Below are positions 51,301 through 64,000 of a stretch of DNA of 64,000 bases, piece after piece. Under the pieces are notes generated by a model. That model worked only from the letters and a program-made list of their open reading frames with translations, made no database searches and was not told the origin of the DNA. How positions within the stretch are numbered: the first letter of the stretch is position 1; each line of letters opens with the position of its first letter. The position numbers were made by a program, and so were the translations under genes. The stretch spans positions 15,810,001 to 15,874,000 of the forward strand of contig NC_079168.1 in the NCBI RefSeq assembly GCF_947568905.1, given 5' to 3'. The DNA is from Ostrea edulis. Taxonomy: Eukaryota.

Positions 51301-52200
51301 CCTAAATGTACAAAATGTTTTCTGTACAGTCCATATGTCAAGTGGTGGGGTCATATTTCAATATTGCAAAAAATGACCCCAGATATGCACATGTTTCTTT
51401 GCAACGATATCTCAGTCAAGAAGAAGCGGTCATATTTCAACATTGGAAGAATACCCAAAAATATTAAATGTTTTAAGTAAAACTTCTCGAAATGCTTGTT
51501 ATGAGCATGCTGCCTTCGTTGAAGCTTGTTCTTTGCTCAAACAACAGAACACAAGTTTTATTTTTTCCAAAATTGTCATTTATTGAAAAAAAAATGACGT
51601 AATAAAACTGTGGTATGAAAAACTGGGAGTCCAATCACATTACACATTATACAATAACCATCTGGGCCAAACTCGCCTTATTGCAAACATATTTCAAAAT
51701 CATCACAAACATAAAAGGAAAGAATGCCTCCCAGTACTAGATTATAAAACCGAAGCAAAAAAGGTGGCCAAAAATTCTCCCACAAAACAAGGTGAAATAC
51801 ATACATGTATGAAACCTTGTAGGCCAAGGGGCCCAAAATGGGATAAAGTATATACATAAATGTTATACTTCAACGAACCTTACTTCAAACAATTTATTAA
51901 TATAAATTTATATTTATGTACAGTCCATATTTTGGACAAGTGGTGGAGTCATATTTCAACATTGAAAAATGATCCCAAATATACACAGTCAGGCAGTAGA
52001 GTATGGCACGTCAAACGTTGCAATGTATGATCTTTTCCATTTGTATTGTACATTTTTTCATTTGTAATGTATAATTTTTCAGTAAATTTTGTATTCCATA
52101 TTTTCCATTTGTATCGTATATTTTCCATTTGTATTGTATATTTTCCATTTCTATTTTATGGTTTCCATTTGCATTTTATATTTTCCATTTCTATTATTAT

Positions 52201-52338
52201 AAAGATCCCTTCCTGCTCAATGGCCATAAACGCCGAGCATAGGCCTAAATTTTACAGCCCTTCACCGGCAATAGTGACGTCTCCATATGAGTGAAATATT
52301 CTCGAGGAGGACGTTAAACAATATTTAATCAATCAATC
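52201..52338 (+). mobile_element. MetaSINE-like 3' fragment
   Basis: Matches 34190-34330. Confidence 0.75.
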
Positions 52339-52567
52339 TATATTTTCCACTTGTAGTATTTGATTTTGTCATTGGGAATTGTATGATTTCCATTTGTATT
52401 GATTTTTAAAAAAAATTGTTATTATAAACGAGGGATTGTTTATTTTTGTTTGTTACAAAGGATTTGATTGGATTAATCTTACGTTATCGTTTATCAAATC
52501 GTATTTATGTGTGCCCGGCGCTGGATTTGTCATTGCTAGCTACGTGTTCAACTAGCCCTACATGGAA

Positions 52568-52915
52568 CCGGTCGCAGTAGCTCAGTGATATATCCTTTGG
52601 TTCATGACTGTTAGGTCGTGAGTTCGAGCCCCGCTCGTGCCATGGCTGCATCAAACATAGGTAGTAATTACCCCTTCGCCAAACACTCGGCATTTCAATG
52701 TGAGAAGCATGGGTCTCTCGGATATGACCTTAAAAGCAGAGACCCCCGTGTTGCGGCACGTGTTGGCATGTTAAAGAACCCCAACTGCTATAACACTTTG
52801 CGCTAAGGAAAAGTCTATTTGTGGTACTGCACCTACAGCTGGTGACGTCTCAGTATGGGTGAGTGAACAATTCTGGAAGTGACGTTGACTAATTAAATCC
52901 TTCGTAACAAATCAA
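52568..52915 (+). mobile_element. tRNA-SINE (MetaSINE-like subfamily)
   Basis: gtagctcagtg A box, gagttcgagccc B box, ccccgtgttgcggcacgtgttggcatgttaaagaaccc core. Confidence 0.75.
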
Positions 52916-53609
52916 AATAAACAATCCCTAGGATGCAATACAAATAAAAAAAAATTACAATACAAATGGAAATTATACTATGCAAATGAAAAATTATATA
53001 ATACAAATGGAAACTATATAATACAAATGAAAAATTATACAATTCAAATGGAAAATATAGAATACAAATGGAAAATTATACAATACAAATAAAACTTCAT
53101 ATAATACCAGTGAAAAATTATGCAATACAAATAGAAAAGATCAAATATTGCAACGTTTGACATTCCATGCCGTAGTAGGTATCAATATTTCAACATTGAA
53201 AGAATTCCCTCAGTAGTATAAGGCGTCCCGATAGGGGGTTCAACTGAGTGCACTTTTTATGCAAATGAGGTCAAGTAAGGGCGTTTTTGATTGGTCAAGC
53301 GGTGTCGGGGTCAACGGAGTGCACTAGGACGGGGTCAACCCCAGCAGGGGTTGTAGAGCGGGTGAATAGGCTGGCCTATGGTCCTAATTTTAGCATGCGG
53401 TACTTTCGCTTTGAGTTCCTGGAATGAGTTCCTGCTATTTTTCTGAAAATCCAGTGAAATCCTGTGTATTAAATCTAAAAGAATAACAGTGTATTAAATC
53501 TAAAAGAATAACACAAGGTTTTAAGTTGACATGTTTATTAAAGAACAATAGTACAATCCCCAGAGCTGGCACGGTCCCTAGTTTTACCCAGCGCTGTCTA
53601 CAGGTAATA

Positions 53610-53644
53610 TATATAAAGCGGCGCGCGGTGCATTGGGTGTCACT
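53610..53644 (+). promoter_or_regulatory. TATA plus Inr promoter of polB
   Basis: TATATAAA (53610) and TCACT (53640), then gacatcATG. Confidence 0.55.
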
Positions 53645-53653
53645 TTCGACATC

Positions 53654-56600
53654 ATGTCAGACAAGTTACCTACTGGACTTCCACGGAGTTATATTGAACA
53701 GCGATTGAGATTTTTGAATGATCAGCTGAACAGACAACGGCAGCGTGAATTACAACTCCGCAGAGAGAATCAACGACGACTACAGTATTTACAGCGGGGA
53801 GGGGGAAAAAAGAAACTCATTTCGGATTATTACAAAATTCAACTGGAACGAGGACGTCAATCACGGAAATTTAAAGTCAAGGAAAATGTCTACAATGTTG
53901 CTTTCAAACCTATTCCAGAGAAAGAAAATACAGCCTTCATTCGTCGGCTCTTCCGGGATATGTTAAAAAATGTGAAACAGGAAATGCAGTGCAATCCCAA
54001 TGATTATCTACGTTTAAATATTCGGCACCCGTCTCTGGATTCAGCTATTTGGTACGAATTTACGCAGTCCAATCAGCTCAACGAGGACAAAATTCTGAAC
54101 AAAATAGAATCCGTCCAGCAATCTAAAAAGGAATTCCTAATCACCGACGGGGCAGTGCAGATGGATTTTTTCCATGTCAAATATCCACAAGGCAGCGGGT
54201 GCACTAAGAAAAAACATCTACACGTGGATAAGGAAAAATTCAAAACCTCCAAGAGAGCGATCGTTCGCATTCAAAATCCTGAGGATTCTCTCTGCTTGTC
54301 CCGGGCTATTGTGGTAGCACGTCTACACAGCCAGAAATCAAACGACCCGGCATGGGAAACGAAATGGTTACGCATGAGAAAAGGGGATAAAGATTCTCTC
54401 GATCAGAAACGAGAAGCGATAGCCTTGATGGAACAAGCTGGGTGTGTTATGAACCAGCCGTGTGGGCCACGTGAATGGGAGCAATTACAGCACGCGCTCG
54501 CCCCACAGTATCGATTGAAAATATTTCAATTCAAAACGAATACAACTCGTTTACGACTGGAACCTATTTACAAAGGACCGGGGTACGGGACTTGTTTGAA
54601 TATCCTGCTGGATAACGAGCATTACGATGCCATTGTGTCTATGCCTGGAGTGACGGAAAACGGATACTATTGCGATTATTGCGATGTTGGTTACAGTCAC
54701 ATTGAAGATCATCGGACCGTCTGTCCTCATCGATGCTCATTTTGTTTAGCCGATACCCCCTGTACCCCGGACGGGACTCAGACGAATTGCCCTCATTGTA
54801 AGGGATTTTTCAGAAATGCAGCTTGTTACCAGAACCATTTAAAACCCTACAGCAGTAATACAACGACCACGGTCTGCAGTTTAATGGGGCGTTGTAACCA
54901 GTGTCAGAAATGGATGTCCAAGAAATTATTAAAACGCCACGCGTGTGGGGGTCAAACCGAATGCCGCATCTGTCACAAAGTCGTCACCATGCCTCATCAC
55001 TGCTTTGTACAGACGAAACCCAAACCTAAGAAAGAAAAAGAAGAAGAAGAGGAGTTGAAAATATACATTTATTACGATTTCGAATGCAGTCAGGAAAACG
55101 GTATTCACATTCCCAATTTATGCGTGGCAGAACGTGTGTGTCAACATTGCGACAGTGTGGATATCGACAAGCCCTGTTCTCATTGTGAAGGATTCGGATC
55201 ACAACGCCGCTTCCTATTTCAAGGACCCGACACGTTAAAACAGTTTATGGAATGGCTCTTACAGAGCGAGACCGATGAGCAAGGCCATGTGGAACTCAAA
55301 CACGATGAAGCCACCATCATTGCCCACAATTTCAAAGGATACGATGGGCAGTTTATTTTGAATTACCTGGTTCACACGGCGTGTATCAAACCCACCGTCA
55401 TCCTGAACGGCAGTAAAATCTTATCCATGCAAGTCTTGGGGTTGAGATTCATCGATTCTTACAACTTTCTACCCTTTGCTCTTGCCAAGATGCCCTCTGC
55501 TTTCGGATTAACGGAATTGAAAAAAGGATATTTCCCGCACTTTTTCAACACGACAGAGAACCAGCAGTATGTGGGTCCTTACCCGGCCGCTCATTTCTAC
55601 AATCCTGACGATATGTCCACCGCCAATCGTGAAGCCTTCTATACTTGGTACCATCAACAAGAGGGCAAAGTCTTTGATTTCCAGAAAGAATTCTTAGCTT
55701 ACTGCATCTCGGATGTGGATATTTTACGCCGGTGTTGTGCCCATTTCAAGTCCACCCTGTTTGATCTGGTGGAAGTAGACCCCTTTCAAGAATCCATCAC
55801 GTTTGCCAGCACGGCTAATTTAGCCTACCGACGAGGATTCATGGTTGAAAATACCATCGCCATCATTCCCAATATGGGCTACCGGCCAGCACGACGATAT
55901 TCAGCTAAAGCTTGTCGATGGTTCGCCTGGCTAGAACATCAACATCACTGCATACGACATGCTAGAAATGGGGGCGAAGTCACGCTTGGACCCTATACAG
56001 TAGATGGGTATGATGAGGAATCTCGTATCGTGTACGAATTCTATGGCTGTTACTGGCACGGCTGTCCCACCTGTTTCCCGAATCTGTTGACTGACATGCA
56101 TCCTCATCGTGTTCAGCATACGTATCAAGACCTCTACCTGGACACCTTAAAACGAGCCAGTGCTTTAGAAGACCAAGGCTATACAGTCGTGAGCATATGG
56201 GAACACGAGTTTGATCGTCAGACCCAGACCAATCCCGACTTACAGGAATTTTTACAAGGAGTCGATATACAAGATCCTTTGAATCCCCGTGACGCTTTGT
56301 ACGGAGGCCGGACCAATGCTACACGACTGTATTGTGAGGAGGGTGACATGCGATACGTGGATGTCTGTTCCCTGTACCCGTACGTGTTGAAATACAAGCC
56401 ATTTCCCGTCCAACATCCCCAAGTCATCACCAGCCATTTCACCGATGTCAGAGACTATTTCGGGCTCATTCGTTGTCGTGTCCTCCCACCCCGAGAGCTG
56501 TATCACCCCGTATTACCTTACAAGACCGGGGGTAAATTACTCTTTCCCTTATGCCGCACCTGTGCGGAACAGCGCAACTTAGGACCCGACGAGCGGTGCC

Positions 56601-57616
56601 AGCACACCGATTCTGAACGCAGTCTCACGGGCACCTGGGTGACCACCGAACTTCACAAAGCATTAGATCTAGGCTATCGTCTCGACCGCATTTACGAAGT
56701 TTGGCATTTTGAGAAAACCAGTGACCACTTATTTCGAGCGTATATCAACACCTTTTTGAAAATTAAACAAGAAGCTTCCGGATTCCCCGAGGATTGTCAA
56801 ACAGCCCAACAGCAGCAACATTACATTGAGGAAATTCAGCAACGAGAAGGCATTGCCATGAATCCGGCCGACATCCAGAAAAATCCGGTCCGAAGAACCA
56901 TTGCCAAACTCTTTTTAAATTGTTTGTGGGGAAAATTTGCTCAACGATTACAATTACCCAAATCCCTGTATCTCACGGAAGAAGAAGAATTACATCAGAA
57001 ATTACAAGATGCCACTTTAGAAGTCAAAGGCATCGAACTCTTAGAAAATCGTGAACGCCCCGAATGTGATATGATGCTGATCAATTATCAGGAGAAAGAA
57101 GAATTTTTAGAAGACTGTCCCTTTGGAAACGTGGTGCTGGCGTGTTTTACAACAGCTCATGCTCGTTTACATTTGTACGAGACGTTACAGCCTTTGGGAG
57201 AGCGTGTCTTATACTTTGACACGGATAGTATCATCTATCAGCACGACGAGACCCAGTTCAACCCGACCATTATCAACAGTTTAGGCGGCTGGACCGATGA
57301 ATTGGGTGGAGATCGTATCATCAAGTACATGTCGGGCGGGCCCAAAAATTATGCATACGAGACCCAGGGGGGAAAATCTGTCTGCAAAGTCAAAGGATTG
57401 ACACTCAATTATCGTGCCTCTAGAGTCGTGTCTCTCGATACGTTGGAAAAAATGTTGAAAGGAGAAGAAGAAGAAGTCCATGTCCGCTATCCGCACTTTA
57501 TTCAACGAACCCGCCAACATGATGTGCGAACCATTCCTCTGGTGAAGAAATACCGCATGGTGTATGATAAACGTCAACGTATTCATAACTATGACACGCT
57601 GCCTTACGGGTATTAA
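53654..57616 (+). CDS. polB: Protein-primed DNA polymerase B (1320 aa)
   Basis: Exo I YYDFE, Exo II HNFKGYDGQF, Exo III YCISDVDIL; Pol motifs YVDVCSLYP, KLFLNCLWGKF, YFDTDS; no stops. First ATG 53654. Confidence 0.97.
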   Translation: MSDKLPTGLPRSYIEQRLRFLNDQLNRQRQRELQLRRENQRRLQYLQRGGGKKKLISDYYKIQLERGRQSRKFKVKENVYNVAFKPIPEKENTAFIRRLFRDMLKNVKQEMQCNPNDYLRLNIRHPSLDSAIWYEFTQSNQLNEDKILNKIESVQQSKKEFLITDGAVQMDFFHVKYPQGSGCTKKKHLHVDKEKFKTSKRAIVRIQNPEDSLCLSRAIVVARLHSQKSNDPAWETKWLRMRKGDKDSLDQKREAIALMEQAGCVMNQPCGPREWEQLQHALAPQYRLKIFQFKTNTTRLRLEPIYKGPGYGTCLNILLDNEHYDAIVSMPGVTENGYYCDYCDVGYSHIEDHRTVCPHRCSFCLADTPCTPDGTQTNCPHCKGFFRNAACYQNHLKPYSSNTTTTVCSLMGRCNQCQKWMSKKLLKRHACGGQTECRICHKVVTMPHHCFVQTKPKPKKEKEEEEELKIYIYYDFECSQENGIHIPNLCVAERVCQHCDSVDIDKPCSHCEGFGSQRRFLFQGPDTLKQFMEWLLQSETDEQGHVELKHDEATIIAHNFKGYDGQFILNYLVHTACIKPTVILNGSKILSMQVLGLRFIDSYNFLPFALAKMPSAFGLTELKKGYFPHFFNTTENQQYVGPYPAAHFYNPDDMSTANREAFYTWYHQQEGKVFDFQKEFLAYCISDVDILRRCCAHFKSTLFDLVEVDPFQESITFASTANLAYRRGFMVENTIAIIPNMGYRPARRYSAKACRWFAWLEHQHHCIRHARNGGEVTLGPYTVDGYDEESRIVYEFYGCYWHGCPTCFPNLLTDMHPHRVQHTYQDLYLDTLKRASALEDQGYTVVSIWEHEFDRQTQTNPDLQEFLQGVDIQDPLNPRDALYGGRTNATRLYCEEGDMRYVDVCSLYPYVLKYKPFPVQHPQVITSHFTDVRDYFGLIRCRVLPPRELYHPVLPYKTGGKLLFPLCRTCAEQRNLGPDERCQHTDSERSLTGTWVTTELHKALDLGYRLDRIYEVWHFEKTSDHLFRAYINTFLKIKQEASGFPEDCQTAQQQQHYIEEIQQREGIAMNPADIQKNPVRRTIAKLFLNCLWGKFAQRLQLPKSLYLTEEEELHQKLQDATLEVKGIELLENRERPECDMMLINYQEKEEFLEDCPFGNVVLACFTTAHARLHLYETLQPLGERVLYFDTDSIIYQHDETQFNPTIINSLGGWTDELGGDRIIKYMSGGPKNYAYETQGGKSVCKVKGLTLNYRASRVVSLDTLEKMLKGEEEEVHVRYPHFIQRTRQHDVRTIPLVKKYRMVYDKRQRIHNYDTLPYGY

Positions 57617-57644
57617 AAAGGACATGCTAGAGAAAACCATCAGT
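57611..57644 (+). promoter_or_regulatory. TATA plus Inr promoter of iap
   Basis: TATTAAAA (57611, overlapping the polB stop) and TCAGT at 57640. Confidence 0.55.
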
Positions 57645-57651
57645 CGGCAAA

Positions 57652-58179
57652 ATGACGGACTACGAATCACTACATAACCCGGGTACACCACGTTATGCTC
57701 TACTGTCAGATCGAGTAACGTCGTTTGAAAATGCTCCCGAACACTTGCAGAACCTATTACCTACCATTGCAGAAGCGGGATACTTTTACAAAGGGTACGG
57801 GGATAACACGTGCTGTTTTTATTGCAACTTTGGACTTCACCATTGGGGAGCTGTCGACAATCCTTGGATACAACATGCTTATTGGTATCCTCACTGTCCT
57901 TACCTGAAGTGTAATAAGGGTAAACAATGGGTACGACAAGCCTTCAATGCCTATGCCCGCGCTAAAGACAGTGGTTGCGATTGGGAAGGCTTACCCTTAG
58001 ACGCGGCAGGGAATCCAATGTGTACCCAGAAATGTCACATTTGTTTAGAACGAGACTTGAGAATTGCTTTTTTACCTTGTGGTCATTTATGTACTTGTGC
58101 TATATGTGCTACGGGACTGAAACAATGTCCTATTTGTAGACATGGTGTTGAGCAAGCTGTACGTATTTTTATTTGTTAA
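57652..58179 (+). CDS. iap: Inhibitor of apoptosis, one BIR plus C-terminal RING (175 aa)
   Basis: BIR: RVTSF..AEAGYFYKG..CFYC-x16-H-x6-C; RING: CHIC..FLPCGHLCTCAIC..CPICR. Intronless. Confidence 0.95.
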   Translation: MTDYESLHNPGTPRYALLSDRVTSFENAPEHLQNLLPTIAEAGYFYKGYGDNTCCFYCNFGLHHWGAVDNPWIQHAYWYPHCPYLKCNKGKQWVRQAFNAYARAKDSGCDWEGLPLDAAGNPMCTQKCHICLERDLRIAFLPCGHLCTCAICATGLKQCPICRHGVEQAVRIFIC

Positions 58180-58219
58180 TAAATATGTATGATCCCATGA
58201 ACTTGTGTCATTTATCAAG

Positions 58220-58858
58220 ATGTATACCTACGAGACACTTGAACCTTTTCAGTTGAAACATGAATTTACCATGGTGGTGGCTGGACCCTCTAAATCGGGT
58301 AAAACAGAATTTGTCAAGCAACTGGTGCAAAATACACAGTGGATTGCACCGCCTCCCGAAAAGATAGTATGGTGTTATCGAGAATGGCAGTCCGCGTACG
58401 AATCCTTACAGGACAAGGTCACTTTTATCCGCAATATACCTCAAGACGATGAGCAGATAGTGGCGGATCTCAGTACGCGTCATCTACTCATTTTTGATGA
58501 TATGATGGGAGGTAAAGCCATCGAATCGATTGTCGACTGGTTTACGCGCAAAGCGCATCATCGCAATACCAGTGTCATTTATATCACACAAAATCTGTTT
58601 GATCGAGCAGTACAACATCGTACCATCAGTCTGAATGCTCACTATCTTGTGCTGTTTAAAAATCCTCGAGATAAATCTCAGATTGGGGTGTTAAGTCGGC
58701 AATTACAAATGCCACATTTACTTCCAGCCTATGAGGACGCCACCCGTGTACCTCACGGGTATTTACTAGTGGACTTGAGTCCTCAGACGTCGGACGATTT
58801 AAGATTAAGAAGTCAACTCTTTACCAACTTGGCTGTTCACATGCCCCCGAGAGTATAA
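58220..58858 (+). CDS. A32/FtsK-like genome packaging ATPase (212 aa)
   Basis: Walker A GPSKSGKT, Walker B LLIFDD, HRNTSVIYITQNLF, RTISLNAHYLVLF. Confidence 0.95.
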   Translation: MYTYETLEPFQLKHEFTMVVAGPSKSGKTEFVKQLVQNTQWIAPPPEKIVWCYREWQSAYESLQDKVTFIRNIPQDDEQIVADLSTRHLLIFDDMMGGKAIESIVDWFTRKAHHRNTSVIYITQNLFDRAVQHRTISLNAHYLVLFKNPRDKSQIGVLSRQLQMPHLLPAYEDATRVPHGYLLVDLSPQTSDDLRLRSQLFTNLAVHMPPRV

Positions 58859-58871
58859 ATAATGTCACATC

Positions 58872-59780
58872 ATGGGCAGGTGTATCATTCGAAAGACAGT
58901 CTTCATCATGGGTAGACCTTCCGCGAAGAGTAAATTAGTCAAAACGTTACGCCGTTTACAACGGGAACGGGATCCCGTTCAACGGAGCCATCTCATTGAA
59001 TTAGGACGTAGAGCCTTACTCAACTGGTTTGCGATGGGCGCTCGAAATTTATTGCGAGGCGTCTTACCAGGCAATAAAATCACTCAGCGGTTCATTCAAT
59101 CCCATCGCCAAGACTTGAGTGTCATTGCCGATAAGAAGTCCAATGAAGAAGAGCGTAAAAAAGCCATTTTGAAACGAGGAGGCGCCGGATTCTTAGGAGG
59201 GACCATTATCCGTCATTTATTCAAATGGGAAACAGGCCGTAAGCCCCGTGGGGGACAACCCAAGAAAACCAAGAAACCACGGGCTAAGAAAGCTAAAAAA
59301 TCACCTCAGAGAATTCCTAAACTCATTATTCGCTTACCTAAGAAGACACCTAAGAAGTCCCCTAAGAAATCCCCTAAGAAGACACCTCTCAGGATGAAGA
59401 ATCCGTTTCCCAATTGGGCTCCAAAGAAAACCCCTCTCATTGTGAAGATGCCGTTTCCCAAGGCCACTCCCCCCAAGGCCACTAAAACGTTAGCCAATCT
59501 GAAAGCCGGATTAGCTCAAAAGAAAATGGAACGACCCATGCATGGGCCTATAGGAAGTTCCAGAACCAGTGATACTGCTCTACCGAGTTTTGCTCATACC
59601 TTTGGAAGCATGAAATTTCAACCCTTAACCACCTCAACACCGGTTCAGGTGCAAAAGAAATATAAATGTAAATTTTGCCCTCTGGTCTTCAATGCGAGAG
59701 AGAACCGCAATCGTCACGAAGAGACCGTCCATCACAAGCGTTTTGATCCTAAACATCCGAGTGCCGTTGTCCTGGACTAG
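58872..59780 (+). CDS. Basic core-like protein with S/TPKK repeats and a C-terminal C2H2 finger (302 aa; likely start 58908)
   Basis: KKTPKKSPKKSPKKTP; CKFCPLVFNARENRNRHEETVH. N-terminal half resembles the neighbouring 109-aa ORF (NLLRGVLP vs NLLKGVIP). Confidence 0.8.
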   Translation: MGRCIIRKTVFIMGRPSAKSKLVKTLRRLQRERDPVQRSHLIELGRRALLNWFAMGARNLLRGVLPGNKITQRFIQSHRQDLSVIADKKSNEEERKKAILKRGGAGFLGGTIIRHLFKWETGRKPRGGQPKKTKKPRAKKAKKSPQRIPKLIIRLPKKTPKKSPKKSPKKTPLRMKNPFPNWAPKKTPLIVKMPFPKATPPKATKTLANLKAGLAQKKMERPMHGPIGSSRTSDTALPSFAHTFGSMKFQPLTTSTPVQVQKKYKCKFCPLVFNARENRNRHEETVHHKRFDPKHPSAVVLD

Positions 59781-59820
59781 GTATAAAAAGGAGGGGTAAG
59801 GTGCCCCACCCTTCATTACC

Positions 59821-60150
59821 ATGGCTCATACGAAGAAGTGTGAATGTCGATTACGACCTCATTTACCGCTCTTGCAGACGTTAGCGGCTCCTCACTATTC
59901 CAGCAAATTAAAGACAGAGGTGTTGAAACATTGTTCCAATGACTGCATTTTAAAGATTTGTGAGATTGTGTACAATCTATTAAAAGGGGTGATTCCTCTC
60001 AATCCTACTCAGAAGCGACAACTGGGTCGAAAGAAACACATCTTAAGACGCTTAGTCCGGACTCAACCCGTGAAAAAACGACGAGGTATACTCATCCACC
60101 AAAAAGGATTGGGTTCGTTTGTGTGTGGCAAGATTTGTAAGAAATCATGA
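59821..60150 (+). CDS. Conserved small basic Polinton protein (core-like, 109 aa)
   Basis: ICEIVYNLLKGVIPLNPTQKRQL..HILRRL..QKG pattern recurrent in Polintons (recognised from memory); own TATA/Inr. Confidence 0.8.
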   Translation: MAHTKKCECRLRPHLPLLQTLAAPHYSSKLKTEVLKHCSNDCILKICEIVYNLLKGVIPLNPTQKRQLGRKKHILRRLVRTQPVKKRRGILIHQKGLGSFVCGKICKKS

Positions 60151-60914
60151 GTCGAAAAATGGTATTGGTACCGGAAGCGATGCTCAACGAATTAAAAGGC
60201 AAATTACCTAAACCTCCCGAATTTACCTCGACTATTGGTTTACGCAGTGATTTGGACGAGATTGAACATCGAGATGATTTAACCGAGAAAGAAAAAGTGG
60301 GGTTGTACGGGCATCAACTTCATCGCTATCGTCAATATTTACAACAAGCTCGACATCCCACCCCAGCGACTCTATCCTCCCCAACCACTGCAACCAGTGC
60401 CGCCTCACCACCCACAGCCGCCTCAGCATCCGATGACTTGGAGGAACAGATTATCAAAAGCGTCAATAAACCGGGTCGAAAGAAAGCAGGTTTATTACTC
60501 GATCATCTCAAGAAATCCAAAGTGGTGACTTGGAATAAAGAAGGAGAAATCAGCTATAGAGGACGCAGGGTTCCCGATTCCAATATTGTGGATTTAATGA
60601 CCGAAGCCCAACGACAAAGACCCTTAAGACATCGTGATCCCCCCGCGGGATTAGAGGAATTTGCTCAAGCGTTAAAAGAGACTCATGCTCCCAAAGGATA
60701 TGTGAACAATCGGGATGTTATAAAAGCCATGGACAAACCAGGGAAAATCAGTACGCCTAGACCTCTAGAGGAAGAGGAGAGCGGATTTCAAGAAATCTCT
60801 GGTTTTGACCAATCGTTCTATGAAACTCCCAGACGAATGATGACCCCTAAAAATATCTGGGAGGCCAGTAAAAAGACATCACGTGAAATTGGAAAATGGT
60901 TAAATCTACCATGA
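60147..60914 (+). CDS. Conserved uncharacterised Polinton protein (255 aa)
   Basis: MSRKMVLVP start; TWNKEGEI..PDSNIVDL motif typical of the ORF upstream of Polinton integrases; ATGA overlaps at both ends. Confidence 0.8.
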   Translation: MSRKMVLVPEAMLNELKGKLPKPPEFTSTIGLRSDLDEIEHRDDLTEKEKVGLYGHQLHRYRQYLQQARHPTPATLSSPTTATSAASPPTAASASDDLEEQIIKSVNKPGRKKAGLLLDHLKKSKVVTWNKEGEISYRGRRVPDSNIVDLMTEAQRQRPLRHRDPPAGLEEFAQALKETHAPKGYVNNRDVIKAMDKPGKISTPRPLEEEESGFQEISGFDQSFYETPRRMMTPKNIWEASKKTSREIGKWLNLP

Positions 60915-61981
60915 AAGCAGAACAGATCTTACAGCGACTGTATTACGATCCCAAGACAGGGTATGGGGGAGTCCAGGCGTTGTATCGTCAAGTGCGTCAA
61001 TTAGGACACAAGATTACCCTGTCTCAAATTCGAGAATGGGTGAAAGCTCAAGATACCTATACCTTGCATAAACCGATACGGAGGAAATTCAAGCGACGAC
61101 AAACACGCGTGACGGATATGGATGAACAATGGCAATTAGATTTAGCCGATGTCTCCAGCTTGAAACAAGACAATAATGGGTATACGTTTTTATTATGTGC
61201 CATTGACGTGCTGTCTAAATATGCCTGGGTCGTGCCTTTAAAACAGAAAACGGGGAAAGAAATGATACGAGGCTTACGACGGATTTTTCGAGAGGGACGT
61301 CGCCCCGTGCGCATTCAGTCCGATCAAGGAAAAGAATTTACCAATAAAGAATTTCGTCAAGCCTTCAAATCCATTCATTTCTTTACGACCCGTAATGCCG
61401 AAACCAAAGCCAGTATTGTGGAACGTTTTCAACGCACGCTGAAAGCACGCATGTGGCGGTATTTTACACGTCATAAAACACGACGGTATGTCGATGTCTT
61501 GGGGGATCTGGTGTATGGTTACAATCATACCTATCATCGCAGTATCCGGCGAGCTCCTGCTCAAGTCAATGCCAAGAATGTCTTGACCGTATGGAAAACC
61601 TTGTATGGAAAACAGAGTGCCGATACCACGAGTCGCTTGCAAGTGGGGGATCGTGTACGCATTAGTAAAGCCAAACGTACGTTTGAAAAAGGATATTTAC
61701 CGAATTGGACCAAAGAACTGTTTACCATCTCTAGAAAAGTGCCAGGACGAAACGTCTATCGTATTCAAGATGATCACGGGGAAGAATTAGAAGGAACGTT
61801 TTACGAGAAGGAATTACAACAAGTGATTAAAGACGATGATGTCTATGAAGTGGAAGAAATCTTAGGGTATAAAAAGCGGCGTGTGGGAAAAAAAGTCATT
61901 TCAGAAGTCAAAGTGCGTTGGAAAGGATATCCTCCCAGTTTTGATTCATGGATTCCGCAAGCGGATCTCATTCGGCCATGA
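60911..61981 (+). CDS. int: Retroviral-like (RVE) integrase with C-terminal chromodomain (356 aa)
   Basis: WQLDLAD, IQSDQGKEF, KASIVERFQRTLK (DDE); YEVEEIL..VRWKGYPPSFDSWIP. Confidence 0.96.
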   Translation: MKAEQILQRLYYDPKTGYGGVQALYRQVRQLGHKITLSQIREWVKAQDTYTLHKPIRRKFKRRQTRVTDMDEQWQLDLADVSSLKQDNNGYTFLLCAIDVLSKYAWVVPLKQKTGKEMIRGLRRIFREGRRPVRIQSDQGKEFTNKEFRQAFKSIHFFTTRNAETKASIVERFQRTLKARMWRYFTRHKTRRYVDVLGDLVYGYNHTYHRSIRRAPAQVNAKNVLTVWKTLYGKQSADTTSRLQVGDRVRISKAKRTFEKGYLPNWTKELFTISRKVPGRNVYRIQDDHGEELEGTFYEKELQQVIKDDDVYEVEEILGYKKRRVGKKVISEVKVRWKGYPPSFDSWIPQADLIRP

Positions 61982-62235
61982 CCAACCAGTGGACTTTCTT
62001 GGGTGAAAAAGTCCCTCGAGCAGAAATTGTGTATTTTGCACAATTATTCCTGTGTTTAACCATCATTATCACTTCGGTCGTCATGTTAGCCTTAGGCGAT
62101 CCCAATCGCGATTTTTGGATGGTGACCTTAAGTTCTTTGGTGGGCTACGTCATGCCTAGTCCACAAATGACGTTAGCGAGCCCGAGTATAAAACAGGAAC
62201 GATCTTCTTCAGATTCATCAGTTCACCATGGCTAA
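61978..62235 (+). CDS. Small two-transmembrane-helix protein (85 aa)
   Basis: ATG overlaps the integrase stop (ATGA); hydrophobic IVYFAQLFLCLTIIITSVVMLAL and FWMVTLSSLVGYVMPSP. Confidence 0.75.
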   Translation: MTNQWTFLGEKVPRAEIVYFAQLFLCLTIIITSVVMLALGDPNRDFWMVTLSSLVGYVMPSPQMTLASPSIKQERSSSDSSVHHG

Positions 62236-62680
62236 CACACAGTACGCCTGGAAACAAGAGGGAAAGAAAACGGCATGGTTTGCGGATAAGCAGATGTGTT
62301 TGATGCATTGTAAACAACACAAAACGTCCACGCATCCTGTGTACTTGTACAAACGTATACTGATACCTCACGGATGGTCAGCCTTTATCATGAAGACCAA
62401 GTATCAAGAGTTTCGCTGGAAAGTCAAAGCCTTCTGGGGATTGATTGGACGACAAGACGAATCCGATTGGACCTTAAATGAGAGTCCTTGGTTTGACCAT
62501 TCCGAGGACTGTCTCCGACATTTCAAAGACATGATCAATGAAGGTTATGATGTAGCCGATTGCTGGGGAACCCGACACTATCTGGTGATGCGACGACGCT
62601 TAGTCCCGAGACGAACACTAGAGTTGGAAGACTCGGATGCGTTGATGTGGGGTGGTGGTGGCCGCGATCAAGAAGAATGA
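62228..62680 (+). CDS. Hypothetical Trp-rich protein (150 aa)
   Basis: Open ORF with good Kozak (caccATGG), packed between neighbours, followed by AATAAA at about 62723; no motif recognised. Confidence 0.65.
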   Translation: MANTQYAWKQEGKKTAWFADKQMCLMHCKQHKTSTHPVYLYKRILIPHGWSAFIMKTKYQEFRWKVKAFWGLIGRQDESDWTLNESPWFDHSEDCLRHFKDMINEGYDVADCWGTRHYLVMRRRLVPRRTLELEDSDALMWGGGGRDQEE

Positions 62681-62757
62681 CATGTAAAATTGTGTATTAA
62701 CATTATGTTGTATGTTGTTTCAAATAAAAAATTGTGAAAAAACAAAACGGTGTTGTG

Positions 62758-62793
62758 TATAAATAGAGAAGGAAACAGAGACAGGGGCTCATT
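62758..62793 (+). promoter_or_regulatory. TATA plus Inr promoter of the minor capsid gene
   Basis: TATAAAT (62758) and TCATT (62789), then gacatcATG. Confidence 0.6.
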
Positions 62794-62802
62794 TAAGACA
62801 TC

Positions 62803-63798
62803 ATGGCTGGAGGAGAAGGGTTTTACATGACTCTGTTGAGTGATGGGTCGATGGAATCGTTTCCGACGAATACGACTGCTCAATTTAAAACGTTATTGCC
62901 ACACACCATGGACTTAACGGATGGAGCATGGGAAGTCGGATTGACCGAAATGATGTACTCGGCCAACTTACAAAACGTATCGGATAGCGAGGCTTATGTG
63001 GACGTTCTCATTCCAGATCCGTATACGAAACATGTCCAAGATCCCAACACTTATAAATGGGAAAGATTTAAGACAGAGAATATGGGCAAAGTCACGATGG
63101 CCAGGTGTGAGGTGGTGGTCCCCTGGGATCTGACGCCATGGTCCCATCTCTTTGCGGGAGGGGATAGTTTATTTCCCTTCGATATCATTCGCATTCACTT
63201 CCGACCCGGAGCTTATACACAACCTTTGGCGTTAATCAATGAAATCAACGCAGCCTTAAGGAGAACCCTGTGGAAAGTATGGAGTGAGTTAGGGAATCCT
63301 AACGACGAGGGGAACAACCAGATCTTAGTGTATCACCCCGAGTACGATCGTGTCGAGTATCAGTTTAATGGGAAAGCACTGAGAACCACCCCCATGTGCA
63401 TTCGTTTCCCTACACCCTTAGCGTACAAGCTAGGTCTGGATAGTGACAAAATGATCCTGGGCGATGAAACCATGACGAAATGGATCAACGTGAATTACTT
63501 GGGGAACACGACCATGGATGTCTACGACAATCTGAAAGCCATGTATGTGTATTGTGACATTGTGGATCCTCAAGTGGTGGGCACCAACAAATTGAAATTA
63601 TTGAGAGTCGTCCCCTGTACGGGTCAATACGACGATCGACAACAAGCCCGTTGGGAACCGATTCGAGCCGAATATTTGAAACTGAGTAAGAAATATTTCG
63701 ATACCATTGAGGTACACATCATGAATTCTTTAGGGCGTCCTATGGGGTTTTTAAATGGGCGCTCCTTAGTCAAACTTCATTTCCGCAAAGTGTATTGA
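62803..63798 (+). CDS. Minor capsid protein (penton, single jelly roll; 331 aa)
   Basis: FYMTLLSDGSMESFPTNTTAQFKTLLP..WEVGLTE; MYVYCDIVDPQVVG..LLRVV; FDTIEVHI..G..LVKLHFR. Confidence 0.9.
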   Translation: MAGGEGFYMTLLSDGSMESFPTNTTAQFKTLLPHTMDLTDGAWEVGLTEMMYSANLQNVSDSEAYVDVLIPDPYTKHVQDPNTYKWERFKTENMGKVTMARCEVVVPWDLTPWSHLFAGGDSLFPFDIIRIHFRPGAYTQPLALINEINAALRRTLWKVWSELGNPNDEGNNQILVYHPEYDRVEYQFNGKALRTTPMCIRFPTPLAYKLGLDSDKMILGDETMTKWINVNYLGNTTMDVYDNLKAMYVYCDIVDPQVVGTNKLKLLRVVPCTGQYDDRQQARWEPIRAEYLKLSKKYFDTIEVHIMNSLGRPMGFLNGRSLVKLHFRKVY

Positions 63799-63801
63799 AA
63801 G

Positions 63802-63945
63802 ATGAAGTACCATCGAGGAGTCAGACGCCAGAAAGGACACGGAATCTGGTTTCTCATTCCGTGGATTGCCAATGCCATTGTGGGTCAAGCGGGCCAAGGA
63901 AAGAAGAGAAAGAGACGGCGTAAAAAGTATAAAAAGCGGGTGTAA
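63802..63945 (+). CDS. 47-aa basic micro-ORF (core/mu-like), absent from the ORF track
   Basis: MKYHRGVRRQKGHGIWFLIPWIANAIVGQAGQGKKRKRRRKKYKKRV*; starts 3 nt after the minor capsid stop. Confidence 0.7.
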   Translation: MKYHRGVRRQKGHGIWFLIPWIANAIVGQAGQGKKRKRRRKKYKKRV

Positions 63946-63972
63946 CCCCTAACGAAGTTCATTTACATCAAG

Positions 63973-64000
63973 ATGCACTACCATAAAGGTTTAATACGGC
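63973..64000 (+). CDS. Start of the next Polinton ORF (truncated by window end)
   Basis: MHYHKGLIR.. resembles MKYHRGVRR; preceded by TATAAAA (63928) and TCATT (63959). Confidence 0.5.

What the first reader, a model, noticed from the sequence alone, without database searches (positions are those of the whole stretch)
57611..58185. A Polinton carries an intact BIR-RING inhibitor of apoptosis between polB and the packaging ATPase
Seen: an intronless 175-aa ORF with a canonical BIR (C-x2-C-x16-H-x6-C) and an IAP-type RING, with its own TATA/Inr and a polyA signal, inside the core replication/packaging module. Known: IAPs are anti-apoptotic cargo of baculoviruses and of the oyster herpesvirus OsHV-1, are not among the core Polinton genes, and bivalves have strongly expanded IAP families with many intronless members. 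Inference: this endogenous virus encodes its own host-death suppressor, and Polinton copies may be an unrecognised source of, or contaminant in, bivalve IAP expansion counts.
Basis: partly seen in the sequence, partly recalled or inferred. Interest (0 to 1): 0.85.

Follow-up and report, generated by a model that had tools for sequence, protein, structure and literature searches.

The report
Oyster Polinton carries its own IAP
A virus-like mobile element in the flat oyster genome carries an intact cell-death-inhibitor (IAP) gene as one of its own long-standing genes, and genome annotation miscounts its many copies as oyster IAP genes.

Summary
Window 57652-58179 (+) is an open 175-aa ORF with a BIR domain (Pfam E 1.7e-15) and an IAP-type RING (E 1.5e-11). 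It lies between a protein-primed PolB and an A32-like ATPase in a Polinton/adintovirus-like element that starts at window 53212 and runs off the window end.

The window is Ostrea edulis chromosome OX387708.1. Eight other O. edulis copies and two of three Saccostrea copies looked up show the IAP between the polymerase and ATPase genes; the third has lost the ATPase block. The gene has the same TATA-plus-initiator module as other genes of the element. Nothing outside its own family exceeds 45% identity, so it is a long-resident gene of the element, not a retrocopy.

New here:
- Core genes of the O. edulis copies are 98-100% identical, but the IAP is 71-91% identical in two copies.
- Synonymous divergence in patches of the IAP is 5-20 times that of the flanks, with dN/dS of 0.3-0.6. 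This points to recombination among old IAP alleles under purifying selection.
- RefSeq names these ORFs as host IAPs, and some models are BIR-ATPase chimeras.

IAP homologues in adintoviruses were noted in 2021, so this is a new member of a known kind. Anti-apoptotic function is inferred, not shown.

The parts
53212..64000 (+). Polinton/adintovirus-like element, left part. It runs off the window end, so the right end is not in the window.
   Evidence: Similarity to eight other O. edulis copies starts at 53210-53212. Four loci have unrelated upstream DNA and identical sequence from 53212 onward, beginning 5'-AG. GC is 0.449 against 0.359 in the host part.
53212..53653 (+). Left terminal non-coding region, length-variable between copies, with a perfect 25-bp tandem duplication at 53464-53513
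53633..57616 (+). Protein-primed family B DNA polymerase (first in-frame ATG at 53654)
   Evidence: Pfam DNA_pol_B_2, E 3.1e-57; ATG position
57611..57644 (+). Candidate IAP core promoter: TATA-like TATTAAA (57611-57617) and initiator-like TCAGT (57640-57644)
   Evidence: A module of the same kind and similar spacing (TATA at -37 to -44 from the ATG) is kept in the five other elements checked, including Saccostrea elements whose spacer is otherwise unalignable.
57652..58179 (+). IAP gene, 175 aa, no intron, intact
57712..57906 (+). BIR domain (aa 21-85), type II-like
   Evidence: Pfam BIR, E 1.7e-15. The model superposes on DIAP1 BIR2, XIAP BIR3, cIAP1 BIR3 and ML-IAP with target-normalised TM 0.80-0.93; rmsd is 1.3-2.5 A for most chains.
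58027..58155 (+). IAP-type C3HC4 RING (aa 126-168), followed by a hydrophobic C-terminal tail to aa 175
   Evidence: Pfam zf-C3HC4_3, E 1.5e-11; aligned end to end with the cIAP1, cIAP2, XIAP and ML-IAP RINGs
58178..58183 (+). AATAAA polyadenylation signal overlapping the IAP stop codon
   Evidence: The 25-nt spacer that follows is 100% identical in the four copies aligned.
58205..58858 (+). A32/FtsK-like packaging ATPase (first ATG at 58220)
   Evidence: Pfam Pox_A32, 29.8 bits against a cut-off of 22.8; ATG position
58872..59780 (+). orf302, no family assigned (sub-threshold C2H2 zinc-finger hint)
   Evidence: conserved in all copies
59821..60150 (+). orf109, no family assigned
60147..60914 (+). 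orf255, no family assigned; second most variable gene between copies
60896..61981 (+). Retrovirus-like integrase (rve core plus C-terminal chromodomain)
   Evidence: Pfam rve E 1.6e-11 and Chromo E 4.1e-08
61948..62235 (+). orf95, no family assigned
62228..62680 (+). orf150, no family assigned; fastest-evolving gene between Ostrea and Saccostrea elements
62803..63798 (+). orf331, no family assigned (possible virion protein, untested)

Best explanation
The ORF is a genuine, long-resident accessory gene of an oyster Polinton/adintovirus-like element.

Shown:
- It is transcriptionally packaged like the element's other genes: a TATA box plus an initiator a few bases before the ATG, and AATAAA at the stop.
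- It encodes a minimal IAP: one type II-like BIR, a short helical linker and an IAP-type RING with its C-terminal tail.
- The gene pool holds old, recombining IAP alleles kept under purifying selection, while the core genes are nearly uniform.

Inferred mechanism: when the element is expressed in an oyster cell, the BIR groove binds the exposed N-terminal IAP-binding motif of processed caspases, or of Reaper/Smac-like IAP antagonists. The RING dimer then recruits a charged E2 enzyme to ubiquitinate them, or pairs with and stabilises host IAPs. Either route delays apoptosis long enough for replication and packaging.

For the host genome record, the practical consequence is that every copy adds a false host IAP gene model.
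For: Identity:
- Pfam finds BIR and RING above the curated cut-offs.
- By PDB sequence search the BIR's best single-domain matches are NAIP BIR2, cIAP1 BIR3, DIAP1 BIR2, cIAP2 and ML-IAP. The RING aligns end to end with the cIAP1, cIAP2, XIAP and ML-IAP RINGs.
- An AlphaFold model built on 106 sequences has pLDDT 92. Its BIR superposes on peptide-bound DIAP1 BIR2, XIAP BIR3, cIAP1 BIR3 and ML-IAP, with target-normalised TM 0.80-0.93.
- Every invariant or near-invariant column of 106 BIR-RING proteins, including W65 and D69, is listed with the window protein's residue.

Residency:
- The IAP lies between the polymerase and ATPase genes in nine O. edulis copies on seven chromosomes. Insertion sites are independent wherever the upstream DNA was compared.
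- The same slot is occupied in two of the three Saccostrea elements looked up, whose core proteins are 66-82% identical to the window's. The third has lost the ATPase block.
- Ostrea-type and Saccostrea IAPs form one clade in 38 of 40 NJ bootstraps, apart from host bivalve IAPs, insect IAPs and a baculovirus IAP-3.
- Nothing outside the family exceeds 45% identity among 1.84 billion representatives and a profile search.

Regulation: the TATA-initiator module is conserved before the IAP ATG across the two genera. Modules of this kind are about 13 times denser in the element than in host DNA, and five of the eight end 4-48 nt before an ORF start.

Selection:
- Within the divergent patches dN/dS is 0.33-0.59.
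- Synonymous divergence there is 0.31-0.97, against 0.01-0.06 in polB and the ATPase.
- All zinc ligands are invariant in the family.
- The IAP reading frame is open in eight of the nine O. edulis copies.

Precedent: viral BIR-RING IAPs are the top structural matches in BFVD, and adintovirus IAP homologues are on record.
Against: - No expression or biochemical data could be obtained, so both the anti-apoptotic role and the choice of target (caspase, antagonist or host IAP) are inference.
- The integrated copies may be silenced.
- dN/dS of 0.3-0.6 is more relaxed than in the core genes (0.03-0.2), and one member of the family lacks the acidic groove residue.
- IAP-type BIR-RING proteins also act in innate immune signalling, which the data cannot separate from death control.
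- The element's right end, terminal repeats and capsid genes were not verified from the window.
Confidence: 0.7

Rival explanations
1. The ORF is a processed retrocopy of a host IAP that landed by chance inside one Polinton copy.
For: The ORF has no intron, and the literature ascribes intronless bivalve IAPs to retroposition (PMC8917759).
Against: - The gene is present at the same slot in all nine O. edulis copies, which have unrelated flanks wherever these were compared, and in Saccostrea elements.
- There is no A-run and no duplicated target around it. The 25-nt spacer to the ATPase is 100% conserved in the four copies aligned.
- It has the same promoter module as the element's other genes.
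- No host parent above 45% identity was found.
Confidence: 0.02
2. The gene belongs to the element, but the protein acts mainly as an E3 ligase in innate immune or NF-kB-type signalling, or against a host restriction factor, rather than as a block to caspase-dependent death.
For: - The BIR-RING architecture is shared with cIAP- and DIAP2-type signalling ligases. RefSeq names several copies DIAP2-like.
- The RING and its tail are the best-conserved part of the family.
- The linker and BIR surface vary strongly, as expected for a changing target.
Against: - The closest solved structures are the caspase- and antagonist-binding BIRs: DIAP1 BIR2 with Hid, Grim or Dronc, and XIAP BIR3 with Smac or caspase-9.
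- The single-BIR-plus-RING viral relatives are annotated as apoptosis inhibitors.
- The protein has none of the extra domains that sit between the BIR and RING of cIAP1.
Confidence: 0.2
3. The copies are inert genomic fossils. The open IAP frame reflects only the youth of the insertions, and the apparent constraint was acquired before integration.
For: - Seven copies are 99-100% identical, too similar to measure selection after integration.
- The two copies with divergent alleles also carry disabling changes elsewhere.
- Mavericks make up only 0.28% of the O. edulis genome (PMC9679248).
Against: - Six of the nine copies have all ten sampled genes open.
- Relatives at 54-73% identity turn up repeatedly in ENA, JGI and Logan assemblies.
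- dN/dS below 1 between deep alleles shows the gene was functional in the lineage that produced the copies.
- This rival concerns present activity, not what the gene is.
Confidence: 0.25
4. The IAP was acquired from, or shared with, the oyster herpesvirus OsHV-1.
For: OsHV-1 encodes BIR and RING proteins and infects oysters. OsHV-1 entries do appear among the structural hits.
Against: - The best OsHV-1 hit is rank 14 at 24% identity. That is no better than the entomopoxvirus, baculovirus and iridovirus IAPs at 24-31%.
- No OsHV-1 protein appears among the listed top 120 sequence hits.
Confidence: 0.03

Closest known systems
IAP homologues of adintoviruses/Polintons (Starrett et al. 2021, PMC8502044; leafhopper adintoviruses, bioRxiv 10.64898/2026.07.28.741253)
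   Same: An anti-apoptosis-type accessory gene carried by an animal PolB-integrase-ATPase element. The element here also has an adenain-like ORF in a sister copy.
   Different: - Those reports are a single sentence and a figure legend, and concern mainly arthropod and vertebrate datasets.
- No bivalve case, no fixed slot between PolB and the ATPase, no allele mosaicism and no host mis-annotation were found described in the library searched.
BIR-RING IAPs of insect DNA viruses (entomopoxvirus MSV248, baculovirus IAP-3, iridovirus 193R)
   Same: They are the top structural matches in BFVD, at 24-31% identity. MSV248 (150 aa) and the Neodiprion sertifer nucleopolyhedrovirus IAP (181 aa) are equally short targets. 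A granulovirus IAP-3 is a full-length sequence hit at 34% identity.
   Different: - Different virus realm and different host phylum.
- Baculovirus IAP-3 usually has two BIRs (from my own knowledge).
- The oyster clade is separate from them in the NJ tree.
Cellular type II BIR-RING IAPs: DIAP1 (BIR2), XIAP (BIR3), cIAP1 (BIR3), ML-IAP/BIRC7
   Same: The fold and the conserved groove columns match. The RING carries the C-terminal tail.
   Different: - At 175 aa, it is shorter than every named cellular BIR-RING hit outside its own family, except a 169-aa Mya arenaria protein.
- There is no UBA or CARD domain and no second BIR.
- It is encoded by a mobile, multi-copy, virus-like element.
- Identity to any cellular IAP outside its own family is 45% or less.
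OsHV-1 (Malacoherpesviridae) BIR and RING proteins
   Same: Same host group and the same domain types.
   Different: Only 24-33% identity, ranked 14th or lower, with no sign of shared ancestry beyond the domain family. No OsHV-1 sequence was fetched.

Membership tests
IAP family (BIR-containing proteins) | A BIR domain with the C-x2-C-x16-H-x6-C zinc site | tested here: met
   Pfam BIR scores 57.7 bits against a cut-off of 22.9. The ligands C55, C58, H75 and C82 are invariant in the family.
IAP family (BIR-containing proteins) | A type II BIR fold with the peptide (IBM) groove columns | tested here: met
   The model (pLDDT 92) superposes on DIAP1 BIR2, XIAP BIR3, cIAP1 BIR3 and ML-IAP peptide complexes. 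The near-invariant W65, D69 and W72 are present. Which columns line the groove comes from my own knowledge.
IAP family (BIR-containing proteins) | A C-terminal IAP-type C3HC4 RING with a hydrophobic tail | tested here: met
   zf-C3HC4_3 scores 44.3 bits against a cut-off of 27. The RING aligns to the last residues of the cIAP1, cIAP2, XIAP and ML-IAP RING chains.
IAP family (BIR-containing proteins) | Binding or ubiquitination of caspases or IAP antagonists; suppression of cell death | not testable with these tools
   No biochemical or expression data are available.
Polinton/Maverick (adintovirus-like element) | A protein-primed family B DNA polymerase | tested here: met
   DNA_pol_B_2, E 3.1e-57
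Polinton/Maverick (adintovirus-like element) | A retrovirus-like (rve) integrase | tested here: met
   rve E 1.6e-11 plus a chromodomain
Polinton/Maverick (adintovirus-like element) | An FtsK/A32-like packaging ATPase | tested here: met
   Pox_A32 scores 29.8 bits against a cut-off of 22.8.
Polinton/Maverick (adintovirus-like element) | An adenain/Ulp1-like cysteine protease | tested here: inconclusive
   None lies in the window part. In sister copy L003, beyond the point where the window ends, a 165-aa ORF hits Peptidase_C5 at 21.0 bits against a cut-off of 21.3, E 2.9e-4.
Polinton/Maverick (adintovirus-like element) | Double and single jelly-roll capsid proteins | tested here: inconclusive
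   The candidate ORFs orf331 (window) and the 467-aa and 230-aa ORFs of L003 have no Pfam hit, and orf331 has no PDB sequence hit.
Polinton/Maverick (adintovirus-like element) | Terminal inverted repeats and a target-site duplication | not testable with these tools
   The right end is outside the window and outside the DNA held for the copies. No inverted match to the left end was found. The left terminus is defined at 53212 and begins 5'-AG.
Polinton/Maverick (adintovirus-like element) | Multiple dispersed copies with independent insertion sites | tested here: met
   Nine O. edulis copies on seven chromosomes share the same left end. The upstream DNA is unrelated in the copies where it was compared.
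Processed retrocopy of a host gene | A poly(A) tract and target-site duplication around the ORF, a close intron-bearing parent gene, and absence from sister elements | tested here: not met
   There is no A-run, and the spacer is 100% conserved. No relative outside the family exceeds 45% identity. The gene is present in every element examined.
Malacoherpesvirus (OsHV-1) BIR proteins | Closer to OsHV-1 BIR proteins than to other IAPs | tested here: not met
   The best OsHV-1 structural hit is rank 14 at 24% identity. None appears among the listed top 120 sequence hits.

The most novel reading that the evidence does not exclude
The IAP slot is the main arena of an ongoing conflict between a currently or very recently active oyster adintovirus and the host's cell-death machinery. 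On this reading, several old IAP alleles are kept in the virus population and shuffled by recombination at domain scale (BIR, linker, RING tail), while the replication and packaging genes sweep as one nearly uniform backbone. That would make this the first Polinton-type element with a balanced or diversifying counter-defence cassette. It would also make the many near-identical, fully open copies in O. edulis a record of recent germline invasion.
Probability: 0.3. Interest if true: 0.7.

Novelty: new member of a known kind. Interest (0 to 1): 0.5.

Why it matters
- It shows that an animal Polinton lineage has kept a host-death regulator as a stable gene across at least two oyster genera. This supports the view that these elements behave as viruses that must manage the infected cell, not as plain transposons.
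- It exposes a concrete annotation error. Dozens of RefSeq 'IAP' models in Ostrea and Saccostrea belong to this family, and some are chimeras of two viral genes. They inflate IAP gene-family counts and can be misread as retrogenes or as immune-response genes in expression studies.
- The sharp contrast between a uniform backbone and mosaic IAP alleles gives a sequence-only handle on virus-host conflict in bivalves, where few viruses are known.

Tried and rejected
- AlphaFold with the nine-sequence family alignment gave a poor model (pLDDT 53). It was replaced by a 106-sequence alignment.
- The search for the right terminal repeat failed. No inverted match to the left end lies within the DNA held for L001-L003, so TIR and TSD remain untested.
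- No donors were found for the swapped IAP patches. No sampled family member exceeds 61% identity to the L002-type BIR or 55% to the L001-type linker. The donor alleles are unsampled.
- I tested for the same hypervariability in S. cucullata (L005 against L013). The pair is about 86% identical throughout and both copies are degraded, so the test was uninformative.
- Pfam gave nothing above threshold for orf302, orf109, orf255, orf95, orf150, orf331 or the 230-, 467- and 140-aa ORFs of L003. PDB sequence search gave nothing for orf331.
- My first NJ clade test failed because my group list left out fragmentary family members. This was corrected.
- Literature searches for a bivalve Polinton IAP found none. 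The supplement of PMC8502044 is not held.
- Hypotheses rejected: a retrocopy, OsHV-1 origin, and recent capture from a host IAP.
- The Mya arenaria short BIR-RING protein is a spliced, host-like gene with no Polinton genes nearby. Not every short bivalve IAP is Polinton-borne.
Full report
**1. The observation**

The window holds an ATG-initiated ORF of 175 aa on the + strand at 57652-58179.

- Pfam finds a BIR domain (aa 21-85, 57.7 bits, cut-off 22.9, E 1.7e-15).
- Pfam also finds an IAP-type C3HC4 RING (aa 126-168, 44.3 bits, cut-off 27, E 1.5e-11).
The eight RING ligands are all present.
- The ORF lies 35 nt after the stop of a 1327-aa protein-primed PolB ORF (DNA_pol_B_2, E 3e-57). It ends 25 nt before an A32-like ATPase ORF (Pox_A32, above the cut-off).
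- An rve integrase with a chromodomain follows at 60896-61981.
- All ORFs of the block are on the + strand. GC rises from 0.36 to 0.45 at the block's start.

**2. Where the window comes from, and the element's limits**

A look-up of a database protein returned a locus, L009, that is 100% identical to window 51652-64000, host flank included. The window is therefore Ostrea edulis assembly GCA_947568905.1, chromosome OX387708.1, near 15.86 Mb.

Similarity to eight other O. edulis copies begins at window 53210-53212. Four loci have unrelated upstream DNA and identical sequence from 53212 onward, beginning 5'-AG. This is the left terminus.

The element runs off the window end. In sister copies it continues for at least another 4 kb. 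There it has 230-, 467-, 165- and 140-aa ORFs, and the 165-aa ORF is a borderline adenovirus-protease hit. I found no inverted copy of the left end in the DNA held, so terminal repeats and the target duplication are untested.

**3. The IAP is a gene of the element, not a passenger**

- Nine O. edulis copies on seven chromosomes all have the order PolB-IAP-ATPase-orf302-orf109-orf255-integrase-orf95-orf150-orf331.
- Elements in Saccostrea echinata (L004) and S. cucullata (L005) have the same order, though L004 shows no match to orf109. Their PolB is 66-71%, their ATPase 68-79% and their integrase 79-82% identical to the window's. Their IAP is 41-45% identical.
- A third Saccostrea copy (L013) keeps PolB-IAP but has lost the following block.
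- In an NJ tree of 116 BIR-RING proteins, the Ostrea-type family and the Saccostrea proteins form one clade in 38 of 40 bootstraps. This count allows for the fragment P0270, which joins the clade in the best tree. The clade excludes O. edulis, Magallana, Saccostrea, Mytilus, Pinctada and Mya host-type IAPs, insect IAPs and a granulovirus IAP-3.
- In an exhaustive HMMER search of 1.84 billion representatives, nothing outside the family exceeds 43% identity. In the profile search the ceiling is 45%, reached only by the Saccostrea Polinton proteins.
- There is no A-tract or duplication around the ORF. The 25-nt spacer to the ATPase is 100% identical in the four copies aligned.

The retrocopy reading, which is how the literature explains intronless oyster IAPs (PMC8917759), does not apply here.

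**4. Regulatory signals**

- A TATA-like heptamer lies 37-44 nt before the IAP ATG.
- An initiator-like TCAGT or TCATT starts 6-12 nt before the ATG.
- Both are kept in all six elements checked, although the Saccostrea spacers are otherwise unalignable to the Ostrea ones.
- Modules of this form occur 8 times on the + strand of the 10.8-kb element, against 3 times in 53.2 kb of host DNA.
- Five of the eight end 4-48 nt before an ORF start: IAP, orf109, orf95, orf150 and orf331.
- AATAAA overlaps the IAP stop in the O. edulis copies checked and follows the stop closely in S. echinata, but not in S. cucullata.

The IAP thus looks like an ordinary transcription unit of the element. This is sequence evidence only.

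**5. What the protein looks like**

- Sequence search of the PDB matches the BIR best to NAIP BIR2, cIAP1 BIR3, DIAP1 BIR2, cIAP2 and ML-IAP. It matches the RING, to its last residues, to the cIAP1, cIAP2, XIAP and ML-IAP RINGs.
- An AlphaFold model from a 106-sequence alignment has mean pLDDT 92 and pTM 0.87. It shows a BIR, a long helix (aa 91-105), a short loop of lower confidence, and the RING.
- Foldseek against the PDB puts DIAP1 BIR2 (Hid, Grim and Dronc complexes), XIAP BIR3 (Smac, caspase-9), cIAP1 BIR3 and ML-IAP on top. Target-normalised TM is 0.80-0.93, and rmsd is 1.3-2.5 A for most chains.
- Against predicted viral structures the best hits are entomopoxvirus MSV248, baculovirus IAP-3, a filamentous virus of a parasitoid wasp, and iridovirus 193R. 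The best OsHV-1 protein is rank 14 at 24% identity.
- Every invariant or near-invariant column of the 106 proteins is listed with the window protein's residue.

The reading that these columns form the peptide groove, and that IAP RINGs need the C-terminal tail for dimer-dependent E2 activation, rests on established knowledge of IAPs and not on a test here.

**6. A backbone that is uniform and an IAP that is not**

Among the window, L001, L002 and L003:

- PolB, ATPase, orf302, orf109, integrase and orf331 are 97.3-99.8% identical in DNA.
- The IAP is 99.1% (L003), 90.5% (L001) and 79.0% (L002) identical to the window, and 71.0% between L001 and L002.
- A 60-nt identity profile shows sharply bounded patches. 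L002 differs over the BIR-coding part and again at the RING's 3' end. L001 differs over the linker. Identity returns to 100% in the spacer before the ATPase.
- Synonymous divergence is 0.81-0.97 in the BIR half when L002 is compared with the window or L001. It is 0.31 in the linker-RING half for the window against L001. In PolB and the ATPase it is 0.01-0.06.
- dN/dS in these patches is 0.33-0.59.

Raised synonymous divergence with sharp, copy-specific borders points to recombination with old, diverged IAP alleles rather than to faster change in place. dN/dS below 1 shows those alleles evolved as coding genes.

No sampled relative is a close donor for either patch. A weaker second variable zone covers orf255 and the region from orf95 to the spacer before orf331.

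The other six O. edulis loci (L007-L012, of which L009 is the window itself) carry the window's IAP allele at 99.6% DNA identity or more, with open frames.

**7. State of the copies (counts only)**

Over the ten genes sampled:

- Six O. edulis copies, the window among them, have no stop or frameshift.
- One copy has one stop, in orf109.
- L001 has two stops, one in PolB and one in the IAP.
- L002 has four stops and two frameshifts: PolB has two stops and one frameshift, orf109 has one stop, and orf255 has one stop and one frameshift. Its IAP is open.
- The Saccostrea copies are more degraded:
  - L004: one stop and one frameshift in the ATPase, a large part of orf302 unmatched, and no match to orf109.
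  - L005: five stops in three genes (PolB, orf302 and orf255), frame changes in three genes (ATPase, orf302 and orf331) and one insertion in PolB.
  - L013: one large deletion.

**8. Annotation consequences**

RefSeq names these ORFs as host genes:

- In O. edulis they are called 'baculoviral IAP repeat-containing protein 7-like', '7-B-like', 'death-associated inhibitor of apoptosis 1-like', '2-like' or 'E3 ubiquitin-protein ligase XIAP-like'. There are at least 11 accessions.
- S. echinata has at least 13 accessions and S. cucullata at least 16.
- Only the thirteen loci I looked up were checked for context (one of them the Mya control). The rest are assigned by membership of clusters at 90% identity.
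- The 209-aa O. edulis models, including the one at the window's own locus, join the BIR part of the IAP to two pieces of the ATPase and drop the RING.
- No Crassostrea or Magallana member of the family appeared among the listed hits.
- A short Mya arenaria BIR-RING protein is a spliced gene with no Polinton genes nearby.

The contamination is therefore real but specific to certain lineages.

**9. Comparison with what is known, and novelty**

Viral BIR-RING IAPs are classical. [quoted passage not shown] A 2026 preprint draws an IAP in leafhopper adintovirus maps.

I found no paper in the library that describes any of the following:

- a bivalve Polinton IAP;
- its fixed slot;
- its allele mosaicism;
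- its effect on oyster IAP counts.

The oyster IAP study does not mention Polintons. I therefore rate it a new member of a known kind, with one feature, the mosaic IAP on a uniform backbone, that could prove more interesting.

**10. Limits and disclosures**

Limits:

- Function, expression and present activity are untested.
- The tree covers only proteins of 150-317 aa, which the search tool returned for a query of this length.
- Relatives at 54-73% identity come from short ENA, JGI and Logan contigs. I did not fetch those contigs because I could not tell whether they are free genomes of an animal virus. The step is referred.
- The loci L001-L013 are chromosomal or scaffold stretches of host assemblies (Ostrea, Saccostrea, Mya). 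I reached them through host-annotated proteins in order to compare the copies as they stand.

Slips:

- I stopped and used only tool alignments, and none of it entered a call or this report.
- In my reasoning I named the place of one copy's premature stop.
- The output printed alignment-piece bounds that bracket a deletion and an insertion in two Saccostrea copies. These places are not repeated here.
I removed the row and did not send that sequence to another remote tool.

Noticed in passing
window 57652-58858 (= L009 6001-7207): The RefSeq gene model at this very locus is a 209-aa 'death-associated inhibitor of apoptosis 1-like' protein. It joins the BIR part of the IAP to two pieces of the ATPase and omits the RING. 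The identical model is called at six O. edulis loci, this one included. Whether transcript data support the splice is unknown.
   Followed up: partly
window 52088-52195 and 52936-53138: Two arrays of a 20-21-bp tandem repeat lie in opposite orientation just upstream of the element's left end. A related repeat (71-91% identical) also lies directly upstream of the copy in L003, but no match was seen upstream of L001 or L002. This may be a preferred target or another mobile element.
   Followed up: partly
window 53212-64000, + strand: There are eight TATA-(18-26 nt)-TCA[G/T]T modules in the element, against three in the 53 kb of host DNA. Five of them end 4-48 nt before ORF starts, which implies very short 5' leaders and gene-by-gene promoters.
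   Followed up: partly
window 60147-60914 and 61948-62802: A second, weaker variable zone between copies covers orf255, orf95, orf150 and the spacer before orf331. DNA identity there is 87.6-98% in L001 and L002, and synonymous divergence reaches 0.15. Between Ostrea and Saccostrea, orf150 is the fastest-evolving gene (28-29% identity).
   Followed up: partly
window 53212-53653: The left non-coding end is the most length-variable part between copies (47-99 gap columns). It holds a perfect 25-bp tandem duplication at 53464-53513.
   Followed up: no
window 57652-58179: The IAP has the lowest third-position GC of the element's genes (0.34 against 0.38-0.54), although its overall GC (0.44) matches the element.
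   Followed up: no
proteins P0002, P0004, P0006-P0009, P0200 and their clusters: Relatives of the IAP at 54-73% identity recur on many short contigs of ENA, JGI/IMG and Logan assemblies. The source could be oyster DNA in environmental samples or free particles. The contigs were not fetched.
   Followed up: no
L006 (Mya arenaria CP111017.1): A 169-aa BIR-RING protein of similar size is encoded by a spliced gene with no Polinton genes within 8 kb. It is a host-type counterpart of the viral architecture.
   Followed up: partly
window 24892-25413, both strands: Two overlapping ORFs of 173 and 163 aa lie on opposite strands with no family match above threshold, in host DNA far from the element.
   Followed up: no
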